Shown here one piece after another: positions 1 to 15,013 of a DNA stretch of 64,000 nt. Below the pieces are notes generated by a model. The model ran no database searches and was not told the DNA's origin. It was given only the letters and a program-made list of their open reading frames with translations. The stretch is from the IMG/VR virus record IMGVR_UViG_3300046808_001241, positions 1-64,000 of that record. One strand, given 5' to 3'. Each line of letters starts with the position of its first letter. Position 1 is the first letter of the stretch. Position numbers and translations under genes: made by a program.

Positions 1-223
1 AGAACAACCTCCTCTAATAGAAAGAATTGTATATGAAAGTAAATAGCCTAATCCTCCTAGCACTAATGCTTCCACTCGTTGGCTGTTCGACTGTTGATCA
101 AGCCAAGAAGGATTTCAAGAACTTTAAAGCCACTGTCCAATACAATGCAAAGGTCAAGCACTTTCCTGTAGTTGTTTTTAGGGATTGACCTGTCCAACCC
201 TCAACCCTATACTCAATACTGTT

Positions 224-403
224 ATGAATAAAACAACTACATACACAATCCAAGAACTTCTTAACAAGTACCCAGCTAATAAAGAGCTGAAAACTCTTGA
301 TTGGTCTAAGGATAAAGACGATCTTGAATTTGATATCAGTTCAATAATTGGTGGAGATTGGATTGTCGATCGTCAGAACAACACTGTCACAAATCTTCAT
401 TGA
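224..403 (+). CDS. early hypothetical protein
   Basis: ATG 39 nt after promoter 185; stop is the TGA of motif 400. Confidence 0.8.
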   Translation: MNKTTTYTIQELLNKYPANKELKTLDWSKDKDDLEFDISSIIGGDWIVDRQNNTVTNLH

Positions 404-435
404 CCTGTCCAACAACAATCTCTAGAATTAAAACC

Positions 436-618
436 ATGAAAGAACACGAACTTGTAAACTATTTGATTGAAGTCCTGGATTGGGCTTCGAATGAAGACAA
501 TATGGTCGTTGGTGTGGATACTTTTGAGAGTGCAGGACTTATGACTAACAACGAAGGTCTTGTAATCAAGATGAAGACTGGAGAAGTCTTTCAGCTGACG
601 GTCAAACAATCCCGTTGA
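436..618 (+). CDS. early hypothetical protein
   Basis: ATG after promoter 400; stop is the TGA of motif 615. Confidence 0.8.
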   Translation: MKEHELVNYLIEVLDWASNEDNMVVGVDTFESAGLMTNNEGLVIKMKTGEVFQLTVKQSR

Positions 619-652
619 CCTGTCCAACCCAAACTCCGATAGTAATACTGTT

Positions 653-913
653 ATGAACAACTACTACACTGACTACTCCAATATTGATCTCAACAGCGGA
701 TATCAAAAGGATTTGAACATCATTGATCCTCTTTCGTTTGCAGATCTTCTTTTAGAGATCAATTGCAACATTCCAAAGATCAACGAGCAGACCGTTCGTC
801 GTCAGTTCGAAGAAGATCTACAACGTACGATCGATTCTGCTCGAGAAGTCTTTGAAGCTAACTTGTCAAACATCGTCAAGCATGCAAACGACTATCGCAA
901 AGAATTAGTTTGA
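653..913 (+). CDS. early hypothetical protein
   Basis: ATG after promoter 615; stop is the TGA of motif 910. Confidence 0.8.
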   Translation: MNNYYTDYSNIDLNSGYQKDLNIIDPLSFADLLLEINCNIPKINEQTVRRQFEEDLQRTIDSAREVFEANLSNIVKHANDYRKELV

Positions 914-945
914 CCTGTCCAATCTAAATCTCTACAATCTTTCTC

Positions 946-1305
946 ATGATCAAATCGACACAAAAACACACAATTACCGTCAATGCAACAGATCTCAAAA
1001 AGAATCTGTGTGCTTCCTATCTGCAACTGCTTCAAGATGAACTGGATGCAAAGGAGATTGACTTCGAGTATTTCAAAATGGATCTCGATCGTTTCCAAGA
1101 CGAGCTGGATTCTGTTGTGAAGAGCGGGTTTGCACAATCGTTTCGCGACGGAAATACTATGATTTTATTGAACGGTGAAGACTTCGAATTCGTCGAGAAC
1201 TGGTTCGATAAGAACAAGAACCTCTCCGAAGAGCTTGTTGTGCGTATCCTCGATGATGAAGGTAATCAGATGGAAGTAGTTCAGCACGTTGATCTAAGCT
1301 ACTAA
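946..1305 (+). CDS. acidic early hypothetical protein
   Basis: 119 aa ORF after promoter 910. Confidence 0.8.
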   Translation: MIKSTQKHTITVNATDLKKNLCASYLQLLQDELDAKEIDFEYFKMDLDRFQDELDSVVKSGFAQSFRDGNTMILLNGEDFEFVENWFDKNKNLSEELVVRILDDEGNQMEVVQHVDLSY

Positions 1306-1319
1306 GAGGTTGGGTCGCT

Positions 1320-1361
1320 AAAAAAGGGGAGCTGGCAAGAATGCCTGGCGGCCAGCTCCCC
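1320..1361. terminator. GC-rich hairpin, probable terminator
   Basis: 11-bp stem GGGGAGCTGGC (1326-1336) / GCCAGCTCCCC (1351-1361); the A-tract before it gives a U-tract on the minus strand. Confidence 0.55.
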
Positions 1362-1418
1362 CCACGCGTGGGATTAATGTTGAGCAGTCCAGGCAAGTTG
1401 TTGAAGATTCTTTCTGTT

Positions 1419-2336
1419 ATGCAAGCTATTCAATCGAACAACACCACCAATAAAAACTTCACTCGTGTACGAGACGTTCAAGTTCCAGAGATCTTCTTTC
1501 GGAAGTTCAAGACTGGTATTGAAGATCTGGACGAAGCATTTGGTGGACAAGGATTTCTTCCTGGTTCTGTAATCACTCTTGCTGCTCCGGCTGGTGTTGG
1601 CAAGAGCTCGATTGCTTTGCAACTCCTTCAGTCATTGGAAGATATTGGTAAGAAGACTGCCTACATTTCTGGAGAAGAGACTTTGGAACAAGTTTCGTTT
1701 GCTGCTAAACGGTTGAGAGCTGAGTCTGTTCCTGTTGCCAATCTTGTTTATATTGAAGACATTGAAGAAGCTGTTGTTGAGTACGGCTTTAATTTTATTG
1801 TGTTGGATAGCTTTCCAACGATTGCAACTAAGCGGAAAGGAATGAGCTCCAGGGAGAAAGAAAGCTATGTTATTGGCAAGCTTGTTAATCTCGCAAAAGA
1901 ACGAGAGTGTTGCATGCTTATCATCCAACACTTTACGAAGAGTGGCAAATACAAAGGAGGTACGGAATTGATTCATGCTGCAGATGCTTTGTTCACTCTT
2001 GAGAAAAACCCTGACGATCACAATCTTAGAGATCTGATTTGTCACAAGAATCGTTTCGGTCAGTGCTCGTTCACTACCTTTCCTTTTGGGGCACAAGGAT
2101 ATACTTTCGAAGCCGTTGCTGCAGATAACAATCCAGAGCGCAAGTCTAGTGCAAAGAAAGAATCCAAAGCGGATCTCGTTCTTGACAGTCTTAGTGAACC
2201 AAAGAACGTTGCGCAAATTGTTCAAGAGACAGGCATTTCTGGACCATATCTTAACATGGTTCTTCGGCAGCTTGTTACAGAAGGCAAGATCAACAAAGAT
2301 GGTCGGGGAGCAGATGCACTGTACAAGAAGATCTGA
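1419..2336 (+). CDS. RadA/Sms-like RecA-fold ATPase with probable C-terminal winged helix
   Basis: TGIEDLDEAFGG, Walker A APAGVGKSS, Walker B IVLDS, ELIHAADA, KNRFG; start taken at the ATG after promoter variant 1380. Confidence 0.85.
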   Translation: MQAIQSNNTTNKNFTRVRDVQVPEIFFRKFKTGIEDLDEAFGGQGFLPGSVITLAAPAGVGKSSIALQLLQSLEDIGKKTAYISGEETLEQVSFAAKRLRAESVPVANLVYIEDIEEAVVEYGFNFIVLDSFPTIATKRKGMSSREKESYVIGKLVNLAKERECCMLIIQHFTKSGKYKGGTELIHAADALFTLEKNPDDHNLRDLICHKNRFGQCSFTTFPFGAQGYTFEAVAADNNPERKSSAKKESKADLVLDSLSEPKNVAQIVQETGISGPYLNMVLRQLVTEGKINKDGRGADALYKKI

Positions 2337-2357
2337 GTCGATATGCTCTTGAATCAT

Positions 2358-2391
2358 CAAAACGATTTTAAACGCATTCTAGAGCCAAGAA
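2358..2391 (+). repeat. 34-bp intergenic repeat, copy 1
   Basis: CAAAACGATTTTAAACGCATTCTAGAGCCAAGAA; matches 7281-7314 with 2 mismatches. Confidence 0.85.
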
Positions 2392-2478
2392 TCAGTGGAT
2401 ATGTGCACGGGCTCTGAAGCATTCTTTGAAAGATAATTGTTGAGCTGTCCAGGATCTGTCTCGAGAATAATAACTGTT

Positions 2479-2676
2479 ATGAACAACACCAATCACATCA
2501 TCAACGACTACTTGGAAGCACTAACCGAGCGAGCTGAAATGGCTGGAGACGATCGGTTAGCATATGCTATGGGCTTCCTGCTAGGATCCCTGAAGACTCT
2601 TGGCCTTCAAGGCTATGAGCTCGAAGTGCTTCAACGAGACACAGCTAACCTTCGCAACCTCATTGCTGGAAAGTAA
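2479..2676 (+). CDS. early hypothetical protein
   Basis: ATG 39 nt after promoter 2440. Confidence 0.75.
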   Translation: MNNTNHIINDYLEALTERAEMAGDDRLAYAMGFLLGSLKTLGLQGYELEVLQRDTANLRNLIAGK

Positions 2677-2679
2677 TTT

Positions 2680-2949
2680 ATGACCACTCAACAAAACACT
2701 ATCAACCTTGTTCGATCGATCATGCGAGCAGGCGGCAAGACTCAAGTCTGGAACAACAAGTACGAAGACGGAGTCCGTACAGTGAAGTGCTACAGGGACA
2801 AAGACACATGCAAGGACTTACAACTCAAGGACATCATTGTTCAGACTCTTGGAGACTTGCACATTGATCATAAGATCAATTTCACATTGCCTTCAGGTGG
2901 TCCTTTCAATCCAGGCACGGGAGGATTTATTGTCAGGCTTCCTGCTTGA
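2680..2949 (+). CDS. early hypothetical protein
   Basis: 89 aa; stop is the TGA of motif 2946. Confidence 0.75.
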   Translation: MTTQQNTINLVRSIMRAGGKTQVWNNKYEDGVRTVKCYRDKDTCKDLQLKDIIVQTLGDLHIDHKINFTLPSGGPFNPGTGGFIVRLPA

Positions 2950-2990
2950 CCTGTCCGAGATCTGTCCCGAGAATAATAACTGTTATGAAC
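2946..2990 (+). repeat. 45-bp exact direct repeat (promoter plus start codon), also at 3239-3283
   Basis: TTGACCTGTCCGAGATCTGTCCCGAGAATAATAACTGTTATGAAC is identical at both sites; a near copy lies at 2440. Confidence 0.9.
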
Positions 2991-3242
2991 GACTCCAAAT
3001 CACTAATCCAAGAAGGCAAAGAACTCGAACAAGAGCTGAAGGCTCTGCACAAGAGGCTCAAGGCTGAGACTAAAGAGCTGAAGAAGAGGTACAGGGCACA
3101 CGTTAAGAGTGTCGACAAGTTCTGTGACAAGAACCAAGAGGATACAGATCTCTGTCTCAAAGTAGGAGCTCCTTTCGATCGTTGTGAGAGTGCTCTTTAT
3201 TACATCCCAGAAGTCTTCGAAGGCTGGAATAGTTTTAATTGA
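2985..3242 (+). CDS. early coiled-coil hypothetical protein
   Basis: after promoter 2946; stop in motif 3239. Confidence 0.75.
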   Translation: MNDSKSLIQEGKELEQELKALHKRLKAETKELKKRYRAHVKSVDKFCDKNQEDTDLCLKVGAPFDRCESALYYIPEVFEGWNSFN

Positions 3243-3277
3243 CCTGTCCGAGATCTGTCCCGAGAATAATAACTGTT

Positions 3278-3475
3278 ATGAACAACACTACCAAATTAGT
3301 CAAAATCCTCGAAGACGCTGGCAAATCGACCCACTACATCATTGGGAATTTGCAAGCAGTTCTGCAACTTCTCGAACGGGAATCTCCTGCTAATGCTAAG
3401 ATCCTCCAAGACTCTGTGAAGTATGCAGAGCAACTAATTCAAATGAACAAAGAAGAAGAAGCTAAACTCAAATGA
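3278..3475 (+). CDS. early hypothetical protein
   Basis: after promoter 3239. Confidence 0.75.
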   Translation: MNNTTKLVKILEDAGKSTHYIIGNLQAVLQLLERESPANAKILQDSVKYAEQLIQMNKEEEAKLK

Positions 3476-3618
3476 AAAAACTGATCCTATTAACACTCCT
3501 CATCAGCTCTGCAACGGGATGCTCTACAGTAAAGCAAGCCCAGGCAGACTTCAGACACTTCCAAAATACAATCAAGTATCACCACAGCCAACCAGTAGTC
3601 CGCAACATTTACTTCTAA
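3472..3618 (+). CDS. small lipoprotein (48 aa, not in ORF track)
   Basis: MKKLILLTLLISSATGC signal with lipobox-like Cys; ATGA overlap with the upstream stop. Confidence 0.7.
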   Translation: MKKLILLTLLISSATGCSTVKQAQADFRHFQNTIKYHHSQPVVRNIYF

Positions 3619-3619
3619 A

Positions 3620-3766
3620 ATGAAACAATACATCAACACCATCCTGTCATTCCTGTTCCCATTCCAAGAACTTAACAGCAAGGTTTCCGTCCTATCAGAA
3701 CAAAGTTGGCTAGAGAAGATTATGACATCTCCTCAAGTTAAAGACTATCTGTGGACTGCTAAATGA
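3620..3766 (+). CDS. small hypothetical protein (48 aa)
   Basis: ATG directly after the previous stop, ends just before a tRNA. Confidence 0.5.
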   Translation: MKQYINTILSFLFPFQELNSKVSVLSEQSWLEKIMTSPQVKDYLWTAK

Positions 3767-3773
3767 TTTTTAA

Positions 3774-3846
3774 GGGCTTGTAGCTCAAAGGTTAGAGCGT
3801 GTTTCTCATAAAAACTTGGTTGGGGGTTCGAATCCCTCCAGGCCCA
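3774..3846 (+). tRNA. tRNA with CAT anticodon (Met or Ile2)
   Basis: GGGCTTG/CAGGCCC acceptor stem, CTCATAA anticodon loop, TTCGAAT T-loop; CCA not encoded. Confidence 0.85.
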
Positions 3847-3851
3847 TTAAC

Positions 3852-3937
3852 TTCATAACACGTCTGATGCGTACGGAACGCATCTTTTCATAACAAAAGA
3901 GAAGAGCTGCTGGATCTAGACTGGCAGCTCTTTTTCT
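3852..3937 (+). terminator. TTCATAACA - hairpin - TTTTCATAACA - terminator hairpin
   Basis: GATGCGT/ACGCATC stem (3866-3884), then GAAGAGCTGC/GCAGCTCTTT followed by a T tract. Confidence 0.75.
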
Positions 3938-3977
3938 TGTTGTCTTGTCCTCAGCTCTTCTCGAAGGTATTTGCATT

Positions 3978-4217
3978 ATGAAAAAGATCTACAAATACAA
4001 AAACCTCGGATATGCTCTTGCAGTCTTCTTCTATGTGGATCTGTCTGTGGCAGCCTTTGCGTACGTTGGCAAAGATGTTGTCAGAGACTATCAACTCAAA
4101 CGGGATGCAGAGAACATTCTGAACACTCCAGATCTCACTACTGGATTGGAAGAGCTTGAGCATGCCGTGCAGATGGACCTTGCCGACCTGGAGAAGACCT
4201 TCCAAAAGAATTCTTGA
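3978..4217 (+). CDS. early membrane-anchored hypothetical protein
   Basis: one hydrophobic segment; follows promoter variant 3940. Confidence 0.7.
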   Translation: MKKIYKYKNLGYALAVFFYVDLSVAAFAYVGKDVVRDYQLKRDAENILNTPDLTTGLEELEHAVQMDLADLEKTFQKNS

Positions 4218-4252
4218 TCTGTCCTAAAAGAATCCTGAATATAAAGACTGTT

Positions 4253-4468
4253 ATGGAAATCAAAAATCAAAGCCAGCTCCGAGAATTCTTTTGGGATGTT
4301 ATGTATCCTCGTTATACGCCAAAGAGGTTTTCCTCTTCTAAAAAATTCTATAGACAGAACGACTATTGTGCAGAGGTTCGAATGAACTGGGTTGACTTTG
4401 TCGATGTAATGCAACGAGAGGGACGAATCTCTGACAATCTAGCTCACACTGCTACTCTTCGAGCTTGA
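4253..4468 (+). CDS. early hypothetical protein
   Basis: after promoter 4214; stop in motif 4465. Confidence 0.75.
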   Translation: MEIKNQSQLREFFWDVMYPRYTPKRFSSSKKFYRQNDYCAEVRMNWVDFVDVMQREGRISDNLAHTATLRA

Positions 4469-4503
4469 CCTGTCCACCAACACTCTCTAAGATTATTACC
4501 GTT

Positions 4504-4707
4504 ATGAATACAACAACCCAACAATTCAATCGATCGTTTGTAGACAAGCTGAAAGGAAAAGGCTCGAAGTGGCTTACAGAGAGCATCCAAGTCGAAGAGC
4601 GCATGCTTAAGTTCTGCCCAGAGAGCGAACTTCCCAAGTACGAGCTTTACATTCAGGTCATGAAAAAAGCTCTCAATGAGCTTGACCTGTCCACAGCTGC
4701 TGCCTAA
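4504..4707 (+). CDS. early hypothetical protein
   Basis: after promoter 4465. Confidence 0.75.
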   Translation: MNTTTQQFNRSFVDKLKGKGSKWLTESIQVEERMLKFCPESELPKYELYIQVMKKALNELDLSTAAA

Positions 4708-4717
4708 GATTATCAAC

Positions 4718-4879
4718 ATGGACAAAGAAGTAAATCAAGCAGACTATCTTTTGCACGACTTGATTATCCCTACTGTTAATGAACACTTCAATGAAGACGA
4801 TCACTACGGAGTGTCTCGAATTGAAGACGATCGCAAAGAAGAAGATAGTCAACAAATGAACTTTTGGGGGAAGTGGTAG
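4718..4879 (+). CDS. early hypothetical protein
   Basis: after promoter 4682. Confidence 0.65.
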   Translation: MDKEVNQADYLLHDLIIPTVNEHFNEDDHYGVSRIEDDRKEEDSQQMNFWGKW

Positions 4880-4880
4880 A

Positions 4881-5078
4881 GTGAAAGTTACCAGGAAGTC
4901 TTTGCTGACTGGTAGGCTGAATACCTTGGAGCTTGATATCACTCCGCAAGAAATGGAATGGTTCGAGCAAGGGGAAGCAAAGATCCAAGAGCTCTGGCCC
5001 CATCTTACTCCCGAACAACACGACTTTATTAAGACAGGTATAACAGAACAAGAAATCAATGAAAGGATTAAACAATAA
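4881..5078 (+). CDS. small phage hypothetical protein
   Basis: GTG start, tightly packed; RKSLLTG...FIKTGIT pattern resembles small phage proteins. Confidence 0.7.
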   Translation: MKVTRKSLLTGRLNTLELDITPQEMEWFEQGEAKIQELWPHLTPEQHDFIKTGITEQEINERIKQ

Positions 5079-5079
5079 C

Positions 5080-5274
5080 ATGACTGCACGAGACCATCAA
5101 TTTGAAGTAGGGACTTGCCTGGAAGAGATCAAGCAGTTCCAAGACCGAGTCCTGGATGTCTATGATCCCAAGGACCAGAAGAAGATTGCTTTGCTGAAGG
5201 AACTGGTCTCCTTGCAAGCAGAACTGGAAGAATTGGATAAAGAGTTCGAGAACTATATCAAAGAGAATTGTTGA
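5080..5274 (+). CDS. coiled-coil hypothetical protein
   Basis: stop is the TGA of motif 5271. Confidence 0.7.
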   Translation: MTARDHQFEVGTCLEEIKQFQDRVLDVYDPKDQKKIALLKELVSLQAELEELDKEFENYIKENC

Positions 5275-5305
5275 CCTCTCCAAAGAGATTGACGAAGGTT
5301 ATTAC

Positions 5306-5620
5306 ATGAACAAAATATCTTTGATCCTTCTGGCAGCAGTGGCGATGACTCTCCAGGCTTGTTCCACCGGTGGATCTTATCAAGTAGGTTACTCCCGTGG
5401 TTATGTAAACAACTATTCTCCAACACGTACCTATTACAATCCTTATAACTCTTACAATCCTTACCAAACCTATTCCGTTGGCCCTCAATACTATAAGACA
5501 CGCGTTCCTTACTTCGGCCAACAAGTTCGGAACTATACTGGAACCCCAATCGCGATGCCCTCTTATAGTCCTTGTGGACAGCAGAGGTCTTCAATGATCA
5601 TCCCCAACAGCTGGAACTAA
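5306..5620 (+). CDS. Tyr/Asn/Pro-rich lipoprotein
   Basis: MNKISLILLAAVAMTLQAC lipobox; YNPY repeats; own promoter at 5271. Confidence 0.75.
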   Translation: MNKISLILLAAVAMTLQACSTGGSYQVGYSRGYVNNYSPTRTYYNPYNSYNPYQTYSVGPQYYKTRVPYFGQQVRNYTGTPIAMPSYSPCGQQRSSMIIPNSWN

Positions 5621-5628
5621 ACAACATA

Positions 5629-5790
5629 ATGAAATACGAAATCCTCAAAAATACTATCGGCGGTCTCATAATCTCTGCAACACTCATCGGAATGGCAATC
5701 CCAAAAGAATCCGGAATGCTTGATGTGGTACTCTTTGCAGCAATGATGACGACCTTCCTCTACGTCGTGCTGCCGACTCAAAAGAGTTGA
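5629..5790 (+). CDS. small two-TM membrane protein
   Basis: two hydrophobic segments; stop in motif 5787. Confidence 0.65.
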   Translation: MKYEILKNTIGGLIISATLIGMAIPKESGMLDVVLFAAMMTTFLYVVLPTQKS

Positions 5791-5825
5791 CCTGTCCAAG
5801 AAGAATATAGATTATAAAGACTGTT

Positions 5826-5993
5826 ATGAACGATCTATTCCTTAAAGCAATCGCACAAGACATTACCTTCGCAGCCCACGTGATGGCAAAGATTATGGGA
5901 GGACTTTTCCTCAGCCCTGACGCAATTGCCATCTGTGTGGTCTTCGGTCTTGGGTTCTTGGCCTTCTGGCTCAAAGCTAAATTGAACGCTTAA
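5826..5993 (+). CDS. small membrane protein (55 aa, not in ORF track)
   Basis: ATG 39 nt after promoter 5787; hydrophobic C-terminal half. Confidence 0.7.
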   Translation: MNDLFLKAIAQDITFAAHVMAKIMGGLFLSPDAIAICVVFGLGFLAFWLKAKLNA

Positions 5994-5994
5994 T

Positions 5995-6198
5995 ATGACA
6001 ATCCCTGAACTGATTGCACAAACCAAGAACCAAGTCTCCCTGCTGCGGGCTCTAGTCGATAGTCACGCAAATGATATAAAGGACTATCCTAAAGGCAATT
6101 ACGATCTTGCTTCTCTAAGTCAGCTCGAGCATTGTTACAATACTTTGTTGACTCTGAACGATTTACTAGCTAAACCTATAACGGAAGAACTTTCATAA
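5995..6198 (+). CDS. hypothetical protein
   Basis: 67 aa; its TAA lies inside a TTTCATAAC motif. Confidence 0.7.
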   Translation: MTIPELIAQTKNQVSLLRALVDSHANDIKDYPKGNYDLASLSQLEHCYNTLLTLNDLLAKPITEELS

Positions 6199-6314
6199 CA
6201 GACCCTCCGTGGCCAGGGAACAAGGCCACCTTTTCATAACTAGGACAGAGCTTCTGCCGAATCAAGCTCAAAAAGAAAGACTCAGAGATCAGACTCTGGG
6301 TCTTTTTTCTTTTT
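6191..6314 (+). terminator. TTTCATAAC - hairpin - TTTTCATAAC - hairpin - terminator
   Basis: GTGGCC/GGCCAC, GAGCTT/AAGCTC and AAAGACTCAGAG/CTCTGGGTCTTT stems, then a long T tract. Confidence 0.75.
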
Positions 6315-6351
6315 GTTGACATGTCCAACAACATAGCTGACTCTATTAAAG

Positions 6352-7218
6352 ATGACACAAAGAAAAATTACCTCCGTGATGGTTACTGAAGGACGACTGG
6401 TTGCTTATGATGGCAGCGAAAAGGTCAAAGAGTTCGGGCAAAACTTCGTTGCAGCTGCTACAGCTTCCCCGGAGAAGGTTATTACCGTTAACAAGTACGG
6501 CCATGTAGAAGAGTGGAAGTTTGATCCAAAGTTCCCTTCTCTAGATAAAGTTCGCATGTGGGGCACTTCTGATAGTCCTGTGAGCATTAGCGCTAGTGGA
6601 AACAATTGCAACGTCACGAGGTCTAATGGCCAGACTGACATGTATATCAACGGACAGAAGTCTCGTACTGTTGGTACTGCTAATACTCCCAAGACCTCTA
6701 GCGAACCTTCTTCTAGTAAGGACTATCAACCAGAACAGCCTTATCAACAATCGGATACTTCATATGCTGACATTCCGGATGGGTTTATGGCAGGAATGGG
6801 TCACAGGTGTAAGGTATTGATCACTGAGCCAATTCCAGGACCTTGGGCAAAGATTGTTGTGTGGTTTACAGCGATCTCCTCTGCTGTGGCAGCTGGCGTT
6901 GTTTTGTATAATACTGGCGAAGCAGATCCAAGTCTTATTGTCTCGGCGCTTGGCCTCGTAGTAGTTAATGCTGGACTTAGCTACTGGCTTCGACATGCAA
7001 TTGCTAAGGTTCTAGTACGGTCTTGGTACGGAGCTCCTCTTGTCATTCTTGGAGCTCTGATCAGCCAAACGTATCCAGACATCGGAGGGATTATTATAGC
7101 GGCAGGAGCAATTGCGTGGTTGTGGCCCATTTGGCCAATTGCATTGATTGTGATTTGTGTAGTGTTTGTAGTGATGGCAGCAGTAGGCAAATCTGTTCCT
7201 ACAATGGATCGTCGGTAA
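6352..7218 (+). CDS. membrane protein with soluble N-terminal domain and multi-TM C-terminus
   Basis: 288 aa; about 4-5 hydrophobic segments at the C-terminus; own promoter at 6316. Confidence 0.8.
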   Translation: MTQRKITSVMVTEGRLVAYDGSEKVKEFGQNFVAAATASPEKVITVNKYGHVEEWKFDPKFPSLDKVRMWGTSDSPVSISASGNNCNVTRSNGQTDMYINGQKSRTVGTANTPKTSSEPSSSKDYQPEQPYQQSDTSYADIPDGFMAGMGHRCKVLITEPIPGPWAKIVVWFTAISSAVAAGVVLYNTGEADPSLIVSALGLVVVNAGLSYWLRHAIAKVLVRSWYGAPLVILGALISQTYPDIGGIIIAAGAIAWLWPIWPIALIVICVVFVVMAAVGKSVPTMDRR

Positions 7219-7275
7219 TTTTTCATAACAGAGAAGAAGGGCCTTGGATTCGTTTCTGAGGCCCTTTTGCTTTTT
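7219..7275 (+). terminator. TTTTTCATAACAG followed by terminator hairpin
   Basis: AAGGGCCT/AGGCCCTT stem followed by T-rich sequence. Confidence 0.7.
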
Positions 7276-7280
7276 ATAGA

Positions 7281-7314
7281 CAAAACGATTTTAAACGCAT
7301 CCTAGTGCCAAGAA
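7281..7314 (+). repeat. 34-bp intergenic repeat, copy 2
   Basis: CAAAACGATTTTAAACGCATCCTAGTGCCAAGAA. Confidence 0.85.
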
Positions 7315-7512
7315 CAATGGGAATTACCCTGCAGAAGATTCTCGTTGAGGTCATCAAGGAAAGACTTGAATGTGTCTGCATGATATTTAGAGCACAACTA
7401 CACATCCTTTGCATGATCAAGAATCCTTCGAAGTGGAGATTCTATTTGAAGGGAATCTTGAGAGAGTTTGGGATTGACCTGTCCAAGAACTGACAGGACT
7501 ATAGAGACTGTT

Positions 7513-7761
7513 ATGAACGCTACATCTACTACACCACAACACAAATCATTCACACGAGTCGTCCCCCACAAGTACTTCATGGACCTTGTCAAGGAGGCTC
7601 GTAGGGTCAAGTACATCATCAAGCAAGAGGGTCAGCACCTGTACGATGTGCGGGACGACGAGACTGGGGAGAAGGTCTTCTTTGGCATGAAGCACTCTTC
7701 AGGCAAGTGGATTGCTTCCTTCTCTACAGCATATTGGCAAGAGCCTGCACTGCCAGCTTGA
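7513..7761 (+). CDS. early hypothetical protein
   Basis: after promoter 7474. Confidence 0.8.
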   Translation: MNATSTTPQHKSFTRVVPHKYFMDLVKEARRVKYIIKQEGQHLYDVRDDETGEKVFFGMKHSSGKWIASFSTAYWQEPALPA

Positions 7762-7763
7762 TC

Positions 7764-7937
7764 ATGAACACATTCAATCCCAAAGACTATATCGTGACGC
7801 TTGATGGCTTCCGAGGCTATGTCGTGAAGCGTCTGGACTATTGCCACAACATGTACGAGATCAGACTCGCATCGGGCTTGACAGTACGGGGCGGAGAAGA
7901 GCTGAAGCTGGATGAGCTGATGTATCAAGAAGCTTGA
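7764..7937 (+). CDS. early hypothetical protein
   Basis: stop in motif 7934. Confidence 0.7.
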   Translation: MNTFNPKDYIVTLDGFRGYVVKRLDYCHNMYEIRLASGLTVRGGEELKLDELMYQEA

Positions 7938-7972
7938 CCTGTCCTGAAGACTCCCTGACAATCTTTAATGTT

Positions 7973-8230
7973 ATGACGATCGATTCAAAAAACACTGCAA
8001 CCTTTATCGGCAATGAGATCTCAGTCCGTCACTCGGTACGGCCAGACGTCCGGAGGGAGTTCCTAGCCTTCTCTATCGACAACGGATGGGACGATGTGAA
8101 GAAGGTCCATAAGAAGGTCCTGAAGTTCCAAGACCGCAAGTTCGTCTTCAGTGGCTGGAACTCAGACACTAACGAGTGCTACTTCTTCCGTCCCTTGAAT
8201 CAAGACCCAGACACTGCTACGATCCTTTAA
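7973..8230 (+). CDS. early hypothetical protein
   Basis: after promoter 7934. Confidence 0.75.
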   Translation: MTIDSKNTATFIGNEISVRHSVRPDVRREFLAFSIDNGWDDVKKVHKKVLKFQDRKFVFSGWNSDTNECYFFRPLNQDPDTATIL

Positions 8231-8254
8231 GAGGGTTTGATTAAATAAAATAGT

Positions 8255-8620
8255 ATGAAGAATAAAGATACTCAATTACTAGAAGAAGCTTACGAGAAAG
8301 TCATGGAACAATCCTTTCCTGTTGGCATGAAAGAGAAGATCGAAAGGTATGCAGAGCTTTCAGACCCTGATGCCGAATTAGATACAGAGGAAGAAATGGA
8401 ATTGAGCGATCTACAAAAGTGGGCTGAACAACATGGAGTAATTGACCATTTCGAGAAGCATGCAGAGAGCGCTCATTTTGGAAGAGGTATGTCAGGACAA
8501 GCTTCTGATCCTCTAGCATTCAGACAAAAAATGATGAATCCTCTGAGAGTTACTAAAGCCGGCAAAGCTTATTCCCAAGACATTCAAGGCAGAAAGAATT
8601 TGATGCGAAACATCAAATAA
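8255..8620 (+). CDS. putative late internal head protein
   Basis: TAAATA at 8242; N-terminus MKNKDTQLLEEAY is shared with 14378. Confidence 0.7.
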   Translation: MKNKDTQLLEEAYEKVMEQSFPVGMKEKIERYAELSDPDAELDTEEEMELSDLQKWAEQHGVIDHFEKHAESAHFGRGMSGQASDPLAFRQKMMNPLRVTKAGKAYSQDIQGRKNLMRNIK

Positions 8621-8631
8621 CTTAAAGAAAA

Positions 8632-8678
8632 TTTCATAACAGTATAGAGAGAGGTCTTCGGGCCTCTCTTTCTTTTTG
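8632..8678 (+). terminator. TTTCATAACAGTAT followed by UUCG terminator hairpin
   Basis: GAGAGGTC-TTCG-GGCCTCTC then a T tract. Confidence 0.8.
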
Positions 8679-8713
8679 TTGACCTGTCTTGCAGACTCTC
8701 TGACTATAGACAT

Positions 8714-8941
8714 ATGAGCACACACAACTATAGGCAAGACATGGAGCGGATGGAAGCCAAGGAGAAGATCGAGCGGCTTGAATGGGAGCTAGCTTGTGAG
8801 AAGGAGTGGACTGAGAAGCTGCAGAAGATAGCACGGGAGCATTATAAAAGTGCAGAGACAGCTAGACAAGAGCGAGACGAGGCTCGCAAAGATGCAGAGT
8901 ACCACAAAGCCCGCTACGACGTACTGAGGGAGAGCTGGTAA
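8714..8941 (+). CDS. early coiled-coil hypothetical protein
   Basis: after promoter 8679. Confidence 0.75.
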   Translation: MSTHNYRQDMERMEAKEKIERLEWELACEKEWTEKLQKIAREHYKSAETARQERDEARKDAEYHKARYDVLRESW

Positions 8942-9202
8942 CATCTTATAACTAAACGACTTATCAATATTGTGGAATGTGTCTTCGCTGGGGGAGTGTT
9001 CGAGGGCCAGTGGGTGGGACTGGATGAAGTGGAAGTAGTGGAGAGCTTCCAGAAGCAATTGGTTCCCAATAATAGGTTTATAACTTCTCCCTTCTGTACG
9101 TTCTTTTATAGGGGCAACAAGTACACGTCTCAGGTGACAAAGAGGCCGACATGGGTCTTTGAATAGTTGACCTGTCCTATAGTCTCCCTGAAAGTCTTTC
9201 TC

Positions 9203-9430
9203 ATGCACACAACCCAAACTCTCATCAATCAACTGATCAAGACTCTCGCCGAACAACTCCGGGCAGTTGATAATGCTACTCTGGGACTGAAGAGTACCTA
9301 CAAGAAGATCGCTCAGTGTTCCAAGACAGTGGCACAGCTTGAGAAGCTCGGAGTGGATCACAACACAGCATACGACAGGGCTGACTTGATCAATGGAGTA
9401 GCGGATCGCGAGACTCTTGGAATGGCTTAA
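9203..9430 (+). CDS. early hypothetical protein
   Basis: after promoter 9167. Confidence 0.75.
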   Translation: MHTTQTLINQLIKTLAEQLRAVDNATLGLKSTYKKIAQCSKTVAQLEKLGVDHNTAYDRADLINGVADRETLGMA

Positions 9431-9434
9431 TACT

Positions 9435-9698
9435 ATGATACTCAATCTATTCCCTCACCTTAAAGGCTACAAAGTACTTCATGGATCTCCGGGGTGCGAG
9501 ACTCCAGAGACTATCAAATCGATTCGGACTGATAGGATTAAGAAGAGCTTCCTGACTCTAGAGTTCGACAGTGGAGTCTTCACCTACATTAACAAAGAAG
9601 ACTTTGATCGGTTCCTGGAAGAAGGAAAGGTATACTTCCAGCGAGCGGCAGGCAGGATGGGCTTCGAAGCTCCAGAGAGTTTGGTTGACCTGTCCTGA
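9435..9698 (+). CDS. hypothetical protein
   Basis: ends inside motif 9685; start uncertain. Confidence 0.65.
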   Translation: MILNLFPHLKGYKVLHGSPGCETPETIKSIRTDRIKKSFLTLEFDSGVFTYINKEDFDRFLEEGKVYFQRAAGRMGFEAPESLVDLS

Positions 9699-9723
9699 GA
9701 CTTTATAGAATATCAATATCGTT

Positions 9724-10062
9724 ATGAGAATAAATACTCCATTCACAATCACTAGCCGTATTGCAGAAGCTCTTGGACTTCCTGACAGCCATATGGCGGA
9801 TGCTCTTCTGATCACTCGGTACAAAGCTGTTGCAGAGATTGTCTCCAGCTTCCTGAACTATACAGATAACAAGATCGCTTCTCAGCAAGGGTTCTTTGCT
9901 TCTATGATCATTCGGATCCTTCTCCCTAATGACAAGGCCGTGCACTTCTCTGATATGCAGACGGTTATCAATATCATCATGAATGGGGAGAAGGCTATAC
10001 AGGAAGAGATGAAGCAGGAGAGGGAAGACTGGAGAGCGGCGCGGGAACTTGCTACTGCTTAA
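9724..10062 (+). CDS. early hypothetical protein
   Basis: after promoter 9685. Confidence 0.75.
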   Translation: MRINTPFTITSRIAEALGLPDSHMADALLITRYKAVAEIVSSFLNYTDNKIASQQGFFASMIIRILLPNDKAVHFSDMQTVINIIMNGEKAIQEEMKQEREDWRAARELATA

Positions 10063-10068
10063 GACTTT

Positions 10069-10239
10069 ATGGAAGACACTACTCCTTCTTATGAACAGCT
10101 TTACATGGAACACCAGAGAGTCCTGGCTGAGTACTATAGAGACTCTGTAGACTTCCATAAGCAGATCATACAGCTTAAGGACGAGCTAGCAGAAGCAAAG
10201 CTAGCCCTACAAAACCAATCCTCAAAAGAAAGAAAGTGA
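10069..10239 (+). CDS. small coiled-coil protein (56 aa, not in ORF track)
   Basis: open frame filling the gap before promoter 10249. Confidence 0.55.
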   Translation: MEDTTPSYEQLYMEHQRVLAEYYRDSVDFHKQIIQLKDELAEAKLALQNQSSKERK

Positions 10240-10283
10240 TCTTATCTATTGACTTGTCCAACGATTGGTCTTAATATTATCTC

Positions 10284-10856
10284 ATGATTAAAACAGCTAA
10301 GAAGAAAAAAGCAGCGAAGGGCAAAGGGTTCAAGATTAAACCAATCCCGTTGAGTGAAGAGCAGATCACAATGTTTGTTAGTCATTATAAACAGTTTAAG
10401 TCTTTTCCTGGCTCAAAGATCCCTTGCACTATTACTGGAAAGCTAACTACTTGTGTAGGGCCTTGGATGCAGAAGAAGATCAAGGAGTTCGGTTCAGCGG
10501 AGTCCTTGTTGCGCAACTACCAATGCAGGGGAGCTCTTAAAGACCAAAGGATTAAAGCAAAGCCTCAGAAGGTTAAACGGAAGAGTAAAGTAAAGGATCT
10601 TATTGAAAAGGAAGAGGGTAAGTATAACATTCCTTCCATGGATAGTTTTGTAAAGCCCACACCATATGATCCCGCAAAAGAATCTGAGTCCGTCTGCTTG
10701 CGGCCCGATATCTTTCTGTCGAACGATCGGCATTGTGATGGATGTCACCACTTTAAGATCTGCCGCAGCCGTCTCAAGAATCTTCCAAAGCATGTTTCAT
10801 TTGATGGAAACAGCTTTGTGTACGATGAAGGTTACAAGACAAAGAAAAAGAAATGA
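10284..10856 (+). CDS. Lys-rich early protein with Cys/His cluster, possible nucleic-acid binder
   Basis: very basic; C-x9-H-C-x2-C-HH-x3-C; promoter at 10249. Confidence 0.75.
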   Translation: MIKTAKKKKAAKGKGFKIKPIPLSEEQITMFVSHYKQFKSFPGSKIPCTITGKLTTCVGPWMQKKIKEFGSAESLLRNYQCRGALKDQRIKAKPQKVKRKSKVKDLIEKEEGKYNIPSMDSFVKPTPYDPAKESESVCLRPDIFLSNDRHCDGCHHFKICRSRLKNLPKHVSFDGNSFVYDEGYKTKKKK

Positions 10857-10969
10857 TCTGGTACATCTATATAGCCTTCATGTCAATACTGATTACTGTC
10901 AACCTCTATGAGTGGTACAAAAAGGTAAAGTAGTTGACGTGTCCGAAGCCTTTCCGGAATATAGACAAC

Positions 10970-11482
10970 ATGACACAGAAGAAGATCTCAATGAATAGGC
11001 GGAAGCTTTCTTCGCCGTACTTCTCAATAAGAAAGGAGAAGGTCAAGTGGCCAACTATCCGCGGAGCATATATGACGGATAGCAATGTGCCTGTACTCAA
11101 AGACTTTGTAACGAAGAAGGGTCGTTCGATTATCTTTCTGGATGGGAAGTATGATACTACTCTGAATCGTTATAAGAATCTTCCATCCGAAGAGCGAGCG
11201 ATCGCTTGGGAGTTCATGTGCAGAGAGAATGGAGTCAAAGGAGGGATCTTCATGCTGTGCTGGCTTGGGAACTTCCACAATGGGTGCATCTTCCATGCCT
11301 CTCCTCAGTTCCCACAGATTCAATGCTGGTATGAACAGATGGGAGTAGAGAGGGCTAATGCGTTCTTCGAGAGGCAAGCATTCAAGATCTATAACGAAGT
11401 GGTAAAGATTGTACACAATGGTGGTTCGATTGTGGATAAAGAAGTGCAAGAGTTTATAACTAATGGCACCAACAAAGTTTAA
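10970..11482 (+). CDS. early hypothetical protein
   Basis: after promoter 10934. Confidence 0.75.
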   Translation: MTQKKISMNRRKLSSPYFSIRKEKVKWPTIRGAYMTDSNVPVLKDFVTKKGRSIIFLDGKYDTTLNRYKNLPSEERAIAWEFMCRENGVKGGIFMLCWLGNFHNGCIFHASPQFPQIQCWYEQMGVERANAFFERQAFKIYNEVVKIVHNGGSIVDKEVQEFITNGTNKV

Positions 11483-11483
11483 T

Positions 11484-11681
11484 ATGACAAAAGAACGACA
11501 AAAACAATTAGAAGATTGCGAGCTTATGCTAGGAAGGATTGCCAACCTGGTGCAAGAGTTCTGTGAAGAGGATGAGACTACCTTGCAAGGAGTTGCAAAG
11601 CTTGTTGCAACCTATAGAGATTATCAAGCACAAGAAGCTTGGGACTTTGTATACTCCTTGCATCTGAAGAAGAAGATATGA
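11484..11681 (+). CDS. hypothetical protein
   Basis: tightly packed ORF. Confidence 0.6.
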   Translation: MTKERQKQLEDCELMLGRIANLVQEFCEEDETTLQGVAKLVATYRDYQAQEAWDFVYSLHLKKKI

Positions 11682-11875
11682 AGATCGTAAAAGTCCCTAT
11701 AGAACTATCCTTGATGAGCTACTTTGATGAAGCACACAGTTCTCTTGTAATGGCTGCTGAGGTTGCTCATTTCGAAAAGCATCCAGAAGCTCAGAACATT
11801 TCTGAACTAATCGATACATTGGAAGAAATTATTCTAAAGGTTTGTGACGAGACATCTTTAACACAAAAAACATGA
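11678..11875 (+). CDS. hypothetical protein
   Basis: ATGA overlap. Confidence 0.6.
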   Translation: MKIVKVPIELSLMSYFDEAHSSLVMAAEVAHFEKHPEAQNISELIDTLEEIILKVCDETSLTQKT

Positions 11876-12054
11876 CAATGCCACTACACATTCAAAGGTC
11901 CCTTGTGACAGCTCTCTATACTACTATAAGTGTTTATTATCCGTTGCGAAATAAGCAGCTTGCGGCGCGCGAGTACGTTAAGCAATCTATTGAGGCTCTG
12001 AGGTATATTCAAATGAATACTCCGGGCGAGGACTGGATAGCGGTAATGATGTAG
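11872..12054 (+). CDS. hypothetical protein
   Basis: ATGA overlap. Confidence 0.55.
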   Translation: MTMPLHIQRSLVTALYTTISVYYPLRNKQLAAREYVKQSIEALRYIQMNTPGEDWIAVMM

Positions 12055-12078
12055 GGGAGTTGTAGTTTAAATAAGTTT

Positions 12079-12684
12079 ATGAAATTTGATGAGGCAATAG
12101 ACACCTATCTAGCTACATCATTCTTTGTGGAGAGTCCGATGTATTATGATGGGTTGTTTAATGAGCAGATGAATGACATTGAACACAATAAACAAATTGC
12201 TCAGAACATCATATCTAGCAACAAACCTTTTGATAGATTTGAAAGTTGGGTTGTATATAGAGTCGTTGATGGCTTTGATGAAGACATACGGACGTTTTGT
12301 TTAATTAAAGATGGGTTAGTTGATGCTTTTATGGAGATAGCAACTAGTAAAGACAACTACTTCAGCAGAGGAGTGTGGCAGAGAAACACGGCTGATAATA
12401 AAGGTTTAATTAGAAACTTTATTCTTAATTTTTTACCAAAGCACTATACTTCATTAATCTCCGACAAAACAGCTAACAAACTGGGCATTAAATTTTATAA
12501 AAAACTTCTAGATGTTTGCATACAAAAAGGATTAAAAGTGACCGTTCTTAAAGGATCTCTTAAAAACGAAATTCCTTATCATGCAAATCAGTTTGAAAGC
12601 TATTGGCACAATGTCAATAGAGATGTTCCTACGCATCCTACATTCGTAACAACAAAGGATGATTTGTTTAAGATTTATTTTTGA
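12079..12684 (+). CDS. ESP-family paralog 1 (possible GNAT-like fold)
   Basis: TAAATA at 12068; VESP, SDKTANKLGIKFYKKLL, FESYWH, LFKIYF match 61397 and 13782. Confidence 0.75.
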   Translation: MKFDEAIDTYLATSFFVESPMYYDGLFNEQMNDIEHNKQIAQNIISSNKPFDRFESWVVYRVVDGFDEDIRTFCLIKDGLVDAFMEIATSKDNYFSRGVWQRNTADNKGLIRNFILNFLPKHYTSLISDKTANKLGIKFYKKLLDVCIQKGLKVTVLKGSLKNEIPYHANQFESYWHNVNRDVPTHPTFVTTKDDLFKIYF

Positions 12685-12704
12685 AACGATAAATAACGGT
12701 TGTC

Positions 12705-13073: not shown

Positions 13074-13108
13074 TTGACATGTCCGATAAGGCAACTGACT
13101 ATTATTGA

Positions 13109-13503: not shown

Positions 13504-13508
13504 TTTAT

Positions 13509-13766: not shown

Positions 13767-13781
13767 CTTCTCTGAGAAGAA

Positions 13782-14369: not shown

Positions 14370-14377
14370 ATAACTTC

Positions 14378-14668: not shown

Positions 14669-14702
14669 CGAATATTTTCCCGTCGGGAGAATAAGTAATT
14701 AA

Positions 14703-15005: not shown

Positions 15006-15013
15006 ATAATTTT

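What the first reader, a model, noticed from the sequence alone, without database searches (positions are those of the whole stretch)
3852..8678. Operon-end TTTCATAAC boxes are exact antisense to the predicted 5' ends of the leaderless early mRNAs
Seen: six copies of (T)TTCATAAC (3852, 3885, 6191, 6231, 7219, 8632). All sit at the 3' end of early transcription units, directly before stem-loops. At 3852 and 6191 the unit is doubled as motif-hairpin-motif-hairpin-terminator. The reverse complement GTTATGAA surrounds the start codon of eight promoter-proximal genes (ATG 224, 653, 2479, 2985, 3278, 4504, 5826, 7513), where promoter geometry puts the transcription start at about that G. At 8632 the match extends to TTCATAACAGTAT versus ATACTGTTATGAA (217-228). 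The motif also resembles a CAU anticodon loop, and the first pair follows a CAT tRNA. Inference: 3'-UTR-derived sRNAs or 5'-3' mRNA pairing could occlude the AUG of leaderless early messages, giving a built-in shut-off for the early array. An operator bound in both orientations is the alternative. I know of no described equivalent.
Basis: partly seen in the sequence, partly recalled or inferred. Interest (0 to 1): 0.9.

Follow-up and report, generated by a model that had tools for sequence, protein, structure and literature searches.

The report
Anti-start-codon boxes at phage early terminators
In an uncultured freshwater T4-like phage and its relatives, early operons end in a short conserved sequence, next to a hairpin, that is the exact complement of the first eight bases of many early messages and changes with them between phages, which points to RNA-RNA pairing that could control leaderless messages.

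Summary
TTCATAAC occurs 17 times in the window against 4.3 expected. The six + strand copies each lie 0-6 nt before a hairpin. All four clean intrinsic terminators of the early region carry the box; the only other one in 64 kb does not.

The complement GTTATGAA sits at eight early promoters. Promoter geometry puts the transcript start at that G.

In 279 kb of related phage DNA, found without using the box, TTCATAAC is the top 8-mer just upstream of strong hairpins (15 of 23, P about 1e-18). GTTATGAA scores 0 of 115.

The box co-varies with the start:
- Phages whose promoters read GTAATGAA carry CATTAC at both box-terminators.
- One unit with a GTCATGAA promoter carries TTCATGAC.

The best reading is RNA pairing between the 3'-UTR box and the 5' end of near-leaderless early mRNAs, in cis or from 3' fragments. 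Occlusion of the start codon is the likely result, but the effect was not tested.

A DNA operator fits poorly. The CAT-tRNA link is coincidental. Known analogues exist (icaR 3'/5'-UTR pairing, 3'-UTR-derived sRNAs), so this is a new variant of a known kind. No RNA-end data could be obtained.

The parts
3774..3846 (+). tRNA-Met (CAT), elongator-like. Its 3' trailer is the first box pair.
   Evidence: ARAGORN and Rfam tRNA at 64.8 bits. The acceptor stem G1-C72 and an anticodon stem without the GGG/CCC run were read from the sequence.
3852..3860 (+). Box 1a, TTCATAAC plus A
   Evidence: Exact match. 5 nt after the tRNA and 6 nt before the hairpin at 3866-3884.
3866..3884 (+). 7-bp hairpin between boxes 1a and 1b, with no usable U tract of its own
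3887..3895 (+). Box 1b, TTCATAAC plus A
   Evidence: 2 nt before the terminator stem.
3897..3938 (+). Intrinsic terminator ending early unit A. The next promoter starts at 3940.
   Evidence: -21 kcal/mol, T tail.
6192..6200 (+). Box 2a. The TAA inside it is the stop codon of the 67-aa ORF 5995-6198.
   Evidence: the frame was read. Orthologous boxes are in L043, L129, L034 and L132.
6209..6229 (+). 6-bp GC-rich hairpin between boxes 2a and 2b. In L043/L129 a fully conserved insert of about 90 nt takes its place.
6233..6240 (+). Box 2b, followed by T rather than A
6248..6269 (+). Weak 6-bp hairpin after box 2b
   Evidence: Read; folded.
6273..6308 (+). Intrinsic terminator ending unit B. The next promoter starts at 6316.
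7222..7230 (+). Box 3, 4 nt after the stop codon of the 288-aa ORF
7235..7268 (+). Intrinsic terminator ending unit C
8633..8641 (+). Box 4. The complementarity to promoter DNA runs on to 8645.
   Evidence: The orthologue in L112 has the same box and hairpin.
8646..8671 (+). Intrinsic terminator ending unit D. The next promoter starts at 8679.
185..228 (+). Class II early promoter: TTGACCTGTCC, 17-nt spacer, TATACT, 7 nt, then GTTATGAA (ATG at 224)
615..657 (+). Class II early promoter, GTTATGAA (ATG at 653)
2440..2483 (+). Class II early promoter, GTTATGAA (ATG at 2479)
2946..2989 (+). Class II early promoter, GTTATGAA (ATG at 2985)
3239..3282 (+). Class II early promoter, GTTATGAA (ATG at 3278)
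4465..4508 (+). Class II early promoter, GTTATGAA (ATG at 4504)
5787..5830 (+). Class II early promoter, GTTATGAA (ATG at 5826)
7474..7517 (+). Class II early promoter, GTTATGAA (ATG at 7513)

Best explanation
The box UUCAUAAC(A) is an RNA element in the 3' UTR of the early transcription units. It pairs with the first eight nucleotides, pppGUUAUGAA, of the 'class II' early transcripts: a 3-nt leader, the AUG, and two bases of codon 2.

Shown here:
- The complementarity itself.
- Its strict strand polarity.
- Its fixed position 0-6 nt 5' of a stable hairpin.
- Its conservation in relatives whose hairpins are unrelated.
- Its co-variation with the start context.

Inferred:
- Transcription starts at the G. 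Class I promoters of the same array place their ATG exactly where class II promoters place GTT.
- These messages have no Shine-Dalgarno sequence, so the 5'-terminal AUG is their only ribosome entry signal. An 8-bp duplex of about -8.7 kcal/mol, perhaps stacked on the neighbouring hairpin, would hide it. The 5' end would also be double-stranded, which would change 5'-end-dependent decay.
- The partner could be the same transcript, since every class II transcript that reaches the terminator carries both ends. It could also be 3' fragments protected by the hairpins. For the first pair, ordinary tRNA 3' processing would release a box-hairpin-box-terminator RNA of about 90 nt.
- Such fragments would build up as early transcription goes on, giving delayed negative feedback on the early array.

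The sign of the effect (repression or protection) is not established.
For: Enrichment
- 17 matches against 4.3 expected.
- All 4 early terminators carry the box; the 1 non-early terminator does not.
- An unbiased scan of all 8-mers over 279 kb of non-redundant sense-strand DNA from 51 related loci ranks TTCATAAC first for lying within 8 nt of a strong hairpin: 15 of 23 against a 2.8% background, P = 1.6e-18. GTTATGAA scores 0 of 115.
- The loci were fetched by the promoter pattern only, so the box did not bias retrieval.

Independence
- The box precedes hairpins of unrelated sequence, behind about eight different upstream genes.

Co-variation
- In the GTAATGAA clade (12-19 such promoters per locus), both box-terminators read (T/A)TCATTAC and none reads CATAAC.
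- In L043, the box that reads TTCATAAC in the orthologous L129 reads TTCATGAC, and the promoter upstream reads GTCATGAA.
- In L160 the only class II promoter heads the only unit that ends in a box.
- The compensated pairs restore about 4 kcal/mol.

Geometry
- The distance from TTGACC to the ATG is 38/39 nt in class II and 35/36 nt in class I.
- The box is tied to the hairpin (0-6 nt), not to the next promoter (22-244 nt, read).
- Boxes are mostly unpaired in local folds; at 3887 and 8633 the last bases pair weakly with the terminator tail.
- No Shine-Dalgarno sequence is seen before almost any gene of the window.

Precedent
- The 7-nt icaR 3'-UTR motif pairs with its own start region (PMC3868564).
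- 8-mers hundreds of nt downstream pair with the ribosome binding site in vivo (PMC12697547).
Against: - No RNA evidence. The metatranscriptome contigs are thin and none covers a box.
- The duplex is short and AU-rich.
- An A after the box is conserved in 24 of 26 copies, and a G follows in 13 of 26. These complement promoter positions -1 and -2, which lie outside the predicted transcript. A 3' dangling A, or starts one base upstream, could explain the A, but this is a loose end.
- Unit C (6316-7268) and L148 carry a box but no class II promoter, so pairing in cis cannot be the whole story.
- Many terminators of relatives lack any box, including the GAGTCTCTC class, and long promoter arrays such as L024 and L137 have none.
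- The co-variation rests on three substitution events.
Confidence: 0.5

Rival explanations
1. DNA operator. A phage or host protein binds the double-stranded 9-10 bp site (C)TGTTATGAA at early transcription starts, to shut them off. It binds the same site, inverted, at unit ends, for example as a roadblock.
For: - The complementarity extends 1-2 bp beyond the predicted transcript start: an A follows the box in 24 of 26 copies and a G in 13 of 26.
- At 8633 it reaches 13 bp of promoter DNA.
- A clade-wide switch of both promoters and boxes would also fit a protein whose specificity changed.
Against: - Orientation is absolute: 15 hairpin-adjacent TTCATAAC against 0 of 115 GTTATGAA.
- The site keeps a fixed distance to a hairpin, which is an RNA feature, and a variable distance to the next promoter.
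- The L043 variant is specific to one unit while other promoters of that phage keep GTTATGA.
- None of the 20 early proteins tested has a recognisable DNA-binding domain. This is weak evidence.
Confidence: 0.13
2. A protein-read RNA signal. Box plus hairpin is a module bound by an RNA-binding protein or nuclease, for processing, 3'-end stabilisation, or a nut-like boxA-boxB site that modulates termination. Its complementarity to the start would then be incidental.
For: - A linear box followed by a hairpin, sometimes in tandem, recalls lambda nut boxA-boxB (my own knowledge).
- Box-hairpin units are repeated as modules.
- The box occurs in units without a class II promoter.
Against: An incidental match would not co-vary with the start context, yet all three variant boxes that adjoin a hairpin of -20 kcal/mol or stronger match a start variant of the same phage or unit. 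The chance of an exact 8-nt complement to the most conserved promoter-proximal word is small.
Confidence: 0.12
3. Control of termination by short 5' transcripts. Abortive or short products (GUUAUGAA...) from the dozen near-identical early promoters pair with the box in nascent RNA and change terminator efficiency, as T7 abortive transcripts do at T-phi.
For: - Precedent: PMC2952870.
- Many promoters share the same initial transcribed sequence.
- The box lies directly at the foot of the terminator stem.
Against: - In T7 the effect needs pairing with the 5' half of the stem. Here the complementarity stops 0-6 nt before the stem and runs away from it.
- The first box of each pair precedes a hairpin that is not a terminator.
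Confidence: 0.08
4. No function. The boxes are target-site duplications or remnants left by small mobile hairpins or inverted promoter fragments, or are chance matches.
For: - The paired boxes flank an inserted hairpin like direct repeats: 3852/3887, 6192/6233, and the 90-nt insert in L043/L129.
- Inverted promoter modules do occur in relatives, for example L005 3400 and L107 1776.
Against: - Single boxes without an insert are the commoner form.
- The -10 and -35 parts of an inverted promoter are never retained.
- Conservation across unrelated hairpins, together with co-variation, indicates selection.
- Chance is excluded.
Confidence: 0.03

Closest known systems
icaR-type pairing between 3' UTR and 5' UTR in one mRNA (Staphylococcus aureus; PMC3868564); also hbs of Bacillus subtilis (PMC5737220)
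   Same: A short 7-8 nt motif in the 3' UTR is complementary to the translation start region of the same transcript. In icaR the pairing blocks the initiation complex and creates an RNase III substrate.
   Different: - icaR targets the Shine-Dalgarno sequence of one gene. Here the target is the 5'-terminal AUG of messages without a Shine-Dalgarno sequence.
- The same box closes several operons and matches a dozen promoters.
- It sits directly against the terminator hairpin.
- The effect is untested.
3'-UTR-derived and tRNA-trailer-derived small RNAs of enterobacteria (CpxQ, SroC, 3'ETS-leuZ; my own knowledge)
   Same: The architecture is a single-stranded seed immediately 5' of a Rho-independent terminator. 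The first box pair is the 3' trailer of a tRNA, a known route to a stable small RNA.
   Different: No evidence yet that a small RNA accumulates. The seed would target the phage's own messages. Chaperone use is unknown.
Long-range anti-ribosome-binding-site 8-mers inside mRNAs (PMC12697547)
   Same: An 8-nt complement hundreds of nt downstream pairs with the initiation region in vivo, promotes decay and blocks initiation.
   Different: Those sequences are selected against in genes. Here the complement is kept and placed at a fixed position.
T7 abortive-transcript antitermination at T-phi (PMC2952870)
   Same: The promoter-proximal transcribed sequence is complementary to RNA at a terminator of the same phage.
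   Different: T7 pairing invades the 5' half of the stem. Here it stops before the stem.
PeSL terminator-promoter cassettes of T4-like phages (PMC2839356, PMC4122927)
   Same: A T4-like phage with an array of small early genes, in which a stem-loop is directly followed by a conserved early promoter (3938/3940, 6308/6316, 8670/8679).
   Different: By their abstracts, PeSLs are described as recombination points. Those abstracts mention no box complementary to the mRNA 5' end; I did not read the full texts for this.
T4 RegB inactivation of early mRNAs at GGAG (my own knowledge)
   Same: A phage-built way to silence early messages at their initiation signal.
   Different: RegB is a protein nuclease acting on Shine-Dalgarno sequences. 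This phage has none, and the proposed agent is RNA.

Membership tests
3'-UTR / 5'-end pairing within an mRNA (icaR type) | A motif in the 3' UTR is complementary to the translation start region of the same transcript | tested here: met
   TTCATAAC against GTTATGAA, in the same units A, B and D. Not met in unit C (6316-7268), which has only a class I promoter.
3'-UTR / 5'-end pairing within an mRNA (icaR type) | The pairing is supported by compensatory changes | tested here: met
   Natural co-variation only: GTAATGAA with CATTAC (two sites) and GTCATGAA with TTCATGAC. That is three events. No mutagenesis was done.
3'-UTR / 5'-end pairing within an mRNA (icaR type) | The pairing lowers translation or triggers cleavage | not testable with these tools
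   Needs reporters, toeprinting and RNase assays.
3'-UTR-derived small RNA | A single-stranded seed lies directly 5' of a Rho-independent terminator with a U tail | tested here: met
   Met for boxes 3887, 7222 and 8633; box 6233 lies 33 nt before its terminator. Boxes 3852 and 6192 precede hairpins that are not terminators.
3'-UTR-derived small RNA | A discrete, stable small transcript accumulates | tested here: inconclusive
   The only RNA run gives contigs of depth 3-20, and none overlaps a box.
Leaderless mRNA | The transcript starts at or within a few nt of the start codon, with no Shine-Dalgarno sequence | tested here: inconclusive
   Promoter geometry: -10, then 7 nt, then ATG (class I) or GTTATG (class II). 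No Shine-Dalgarno sequence. No 5'-end mapping.
T7-type abortive-transcript antitermination | The initial transcribed sequence pairs with the 5' half of the terminator stem | tested here: not met
   Complementarity ends 0-6 nt before the stem. The requirement is taken from PMC2952870.
PeSL cassette | A composite stem-loop plus early promoter, repeated in the early or hyperplastic region | tested here: met
   Three of the four early terminators abut a TTGAC-type promoter.
PeSL cassette | Serves as a point of recombination between related phages | not tested
   Gene content differs between relatives around shared promoters, but breakpoints were not mapped.
Lambda nut-like site | A linear box followed by a hairpin, placed promoter-proximally and upstream of the terminators it overrides | tested here: not met
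   Box plus hairpin is present, but it sits at unit ends, on or next to the terminator itself.
DNA operator | The site works on duplex DNA, so its orientation relative to RNA features is free | tested here: not met
   15 against 0 orientation bias next to hairpins.

The most novel reading that the evidence does not exclude
A clade of freshwater T4-like phages tags its early operons with matching ends. Each class II transcript begins with GUUAUGAA, and each operon ends with one or two copies of the complement beside a hairpin. The phage's own 3' ends, in cis or as accumulating fragments, would then titrate the 5'-terminal start codons of leaderless messages and time the shut-off of the whole early array, with no protein repressor or nuclease. 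This would be the first RNA-only, genome-wide control of leaderless translation, and a bacterial-virus analogue of end-to-end mRNA communication.
Probability: 0.3. Interest if true: 0.8.

Novelty: new variant of a known kind. Interest (0 to 1): 0.62.

Why it matters
- How leaderless messages are regulated is poorly understood, because they offer no 5' UTR for regulators to act on. A 3' element that reads the 5'-terminal start codon would be a simple general answer.
- How T4-like phages without RegB, MotA or AsiA turn their early genes off is also open.
- The system gives a ready-made test. Nature provides matched variant pairs: GUUAUGAA with UUCAUAAC, GUAAUGAA with UUCAUUAC, and GUCAUGAA with UUCAUGAC.
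- If the box proves inert, the conserved promoter array (extended -35 TTGACCTGTCC, start at a fixed 7-8 nt after the -10, no Shine-Dalgarno sequence anywhere) still marks an unusual expression strategy in an abundant group of lake phages.

Tried and rejected
- **Known phages by DNA:** no match in 50,697 records. The DNA polymerase is only about 32% identical to those of cyanophages and pelagiphages.
- **RNA evidence:**
  - The first run search failed.
  - The second found one metatranscriptome.
  - Its contigs are short, of low depth and miss every box, so neither transcript starts nor small RNAs can be judged.
- **Link to tRNA-Met or the anticodon loop:** rejected. Neighbouring tRNAs in relatives are His, Thr, Trp and Met, and any complement of an AUG context looks like a CAU loop.
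- **Rfam:** nothing at the boxes, at the 90-nt insert of L043/L129, or at the 38-nt repeat.
- **Relatives through the early ATPase alone:** the single protein found only the window itself. An alignment found 57 loci, but most distant ones lack both the promoter type and the box. In the clade with 37% identity, TTCATAAC lies in a coding region.
- **Extra relatives by the GTAATGA promoter pattern in viral contigs:** few useful loci. Walking along the L026 contig with the look-up of encoding contigs worked; one look-up found nothing.
- **Pfam on 20 early proteins:** no informative hit.
- **Fixed spacing of the box to the next promoter:** rejected (22-244 nt).
- **The box as the stop codon of the last gene:** true only at 6192.
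- **Minus-strand promoter or ORF at the boxes:** no -35/-10 there.

Full report
**What the window is**

The window is the first 64 kb of a 217-kb uncultured viral contig (locus L003). DNA runs from freshwater metagenomes hold it. It encodes a T4-type replication set: family B polymerase, Rad50/Mre11-like pair, RecA/UvsX-like protein, DnaB-type helicase and primase. The polymerase is only about 32% identical to those of cyanophages and pelagiphages, and no phage record matches the DNA.

The first 16 kb or so is an array of small genes. It holds about 25 nearly identical promoters: TTGACCTGTCC, a 17-nt spacer counted from the TTGACC hexamer, a TAnnAT-like -10, and then an ATG within 7-11 nt. Almost no gene in the window has a Shine-Dalgarno sequence.

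**The observation**

TTCATAAC occurs 17 times against 4.3 expected; none of 100 shuffles reached 17.
- Six copies are on the + strand, all between 3852 and 8640. Each is 0-6 nt upstream of a hairpin.
- Eight copies are on the - strand.
- A scan of the whole + strand finds five clean intrinsic terminators. The four in the early region all have the box; the one at 58398 does not.
- The strong hairpin at 1326-1361 has no box.

**Where transcripts start**

The promoters fall into two classes that differ by exactly 3 nt in the distance from TTGACC to the ATG.
- Class I (35/36 nt): the -10, then 6-7 nt, then ATG.
- Class II (38/39 nt): the -10, then 6-7 nt, then GTTATG.

Both classes place a purine preceded by a pyrimidine 7-8 nt after the -10, the usual start position for sigma-70 promoters (established knowledge). 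Class I messages would then be truly leaderless, and class II messages would begin pppGUUAUGAA. This is an inference. No 5'-end data exist.

**Relatives**

I searched public collections with the promoter pattern only, so the box did not bias retrieval. I added an alignment of the early KaiC/RecA-like ATPase. Dozens of diverged freshwater relatives carry the same promoter array.

I oriented each locus by its promoters and removed redundancy. I then asked, for all 65,536 8-mers, how often each lies within 8 nt upstream of a strong hairpin.
- TTCATAAC ranks first: 15 of 23 occurrences against a 2.8% background, P = 1.6e-18.
- Overlapping words follow it in the ranking.
- GTTATGAA scores 0 of 115.

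The hairpins behind the boxes are unrelated in sequence and follow about eight different genes. The box is therefore kept by selection, not by descent of a whole cassette. Its logo is TTCAT(A/T/G)AC followed by A. Its distance to the hairpin is constant, while its distance to the next promoter ranges from 22 to 244 nt.

**Co-variation**

One clade uses GTAATGAA instead of GTTATGAA at 12-19 promoters per locus. It comprises L026/L210 and L211-L214. In it, both box-terminators read (T/A)TCATTAC, and no CATAAC adjoins a hairpin.

In L043, the box that reads TTCATAAC in the orthologous 3' UTR of L129 reads TTCATGAC, and the promoter upstream in L043 reads GTCATGAA.

In the distant L160, the only class II promoter heads the only unit that ends in a box.

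Searches list the box variants that adjoin a hairpin. Three of them adjoin a hairpin of -20 kcal/mol or stronger, and all three match a start variant of the same phage or unit. A fourth listing, TTCATGAC at L049 584, adjoins only a -13.8 hairpin and lies in probable coding sequence. A fifth, TTAATAAC at L017 2126, merges into the terminator's A tract and may not be a box. The matched pairs regain about 4 kcal/mol over the mismatched ones, and the wild-type duplex is about -8.7 kcal/mol. These are only three events, but they are what pairing predicts.

**Interpretation**

The link to a hairpin, the absolute strand polarity and the unit-specific L043 change point to an RNA-level role, with pairing to the 5' end of class II messages. 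Because these messages lack a Shine-Dalgarno sequence, hiding the terminal AUG should block ribosome entry. A paired 5' end should also alter decay.

Both partners lie on every class II transcript that reaches the terminator, so pairing in cis is possible. Unit C (6316-7268) and L148 carry a box without a class II promoter, which argues that 3' fragments also act in trans. The first pair is the 3' trailer of a tRNA, so normal tRNA processing would free a box-hairpin-box-terminator RNA. That route is known for 3'ETS-leuZ (my own knowledge).

I put 0.5 on this pairing model with start-codon occlusion as its effect. About 0.6 goes on RNA pairing of any kind, including the T7-like variant.

**Loose ends**
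- The A after the box (24 of 26), and less so the next G, complement promoter positions -1 and -2, outside the predicted transcript. A 3' dangling A stabilises a terminal C-G pair, or some transcripts may start one base earlier. It is also the best point for the operator rival.
- Many terminators of relatives have no box, and some long arrays have none.
- The duplex is weak and may need a chaperone.
- The metatranscriptome holds 99%-identical fragments of the early region, but at depth 3-20 and never over a box.

**Rivals**
- A duplex-DNA operator (0.13) is disfavoured by polarity, by the tie to hairpins and by L043.
- A protein-read box-hairpin module (0.12) does not explain the co-variation.
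- T7-like antitermination by short 5' transcripts (0.08) fails its defining feature: pairing does not enter the stem.
- Relics or chance (0.03) are excluded.

**Comparison with known systems**

The closest working analogue is the icaR 3'-UTR motif that pairs with its own start region (PMC3868564). The recent demonstration that 8-mers far downstream pair with the ribosome binding site in vivo supports this (PMC12697547).

The architecture is that of 3'-UTR-derived small RNAs. The surrounding terminator-promoter junctions resemble PeSL cassettes of T4-like phages (PMC2839356, PMC4122927), whose abstracts mention no such box.

The differences are these:
- The target is a 5'-terminal start codon rather than a Shine-Dalgarno sequence.
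- One box serves many promoters.
- The position against the hairpin is fixed.
- The design is shared by a phage clade.

Hence a new variant of a known kind, with the mechanism unproven.

Noticed in passing
window 2356-2395 and 7279-7318; also L005, L014 (twice), L017, L028, L030, L032, L043, L050, L086, L132 (twice): A block of about 38 nt, CAAAACGATTTTAAACGCATTCTAGAGCCAAGAATC, is far more conserved than the coding DNA around it.
- It usually lies just after a terminator and 50-130 nt before the next early promoter.
- It contains AAACG twice, 10 nt apart.
- It has no conserved RNA fold and no Rfam match.
- In L086 it lies between a tRNA-like sequence and a box-terminator.
- It may be a second promoter class or a protein-binding site.
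   Followed up: partly
L043 sense 627-712 and L129 sense 1987-2072, at the position of window 6200-6232: Between the two boxes these relatives carry an insert of about 90 nt. It is GC-rich and folds strongly. It is essentially identical (one mismatch) between the two phages, while flanking genes are 85% identical. The window has only a 21-nt hairpin there. No Rfam match.
   Followed up: partly
window 24603-25036: The phage encodes a full-length tmRNA (Rfam 125.7 bits). ARAGORN reads an unusually long tag peptide ending in ELAA. An array of ten tRNA genes follows at 25.0-27.0 kb.
   Followed up: no
window 19632-19706: ARAGORN calls a tRNA-like gene with a four-base anticodon (gacg). Rfam does not report it at gathering score.
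   Followed up: no
whole window: Almost no gene, early or later, has a Shine-Dalgarno sequence. Starts are typically preceded by A/T-rich sequence and followed by AAx codons. The host probably initiates translation without Shine-Dalgarno pairing, but its identity was not established.
   Followed up: partly
window 1-12000 against 12000-64000: The early array has 41-46% G+C, while the rest of the window has 32-39%, apart from 41.6% at the tmRNA/tRNA block around 24-26 kb.
   Followed up: no
window 185-16000 and relatives: The -35 region is conserved over 11 nt (TTGACCTGTCC), five more than a sigma-70 hexamer needs. This holds across phages whose genes have diverged to about 50% identity, which suggests an extra contact or factor.
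   Followed up: no
window 1419-2333 and L154 (same contig, 190-211 kb): The early KaiC/RecA-like ATPase has a paralogue, 56% identical, near the other end of the 217-kb contig.
   Followed up: no
window 1326-1361: A strong GC-rich hairpin (-24.6 kcal/mol) with neither a U tract nor a box lies between the 119-aa gene and the promoter of the ATPase gene.
   Followed up: no
window 7305-7493: A small ORF reading MGITLQKILVEV... begins a few nt after the 38-nt block. It recurs after the same block in L043 and, with a GTG start, in L132.
   Followed up: no
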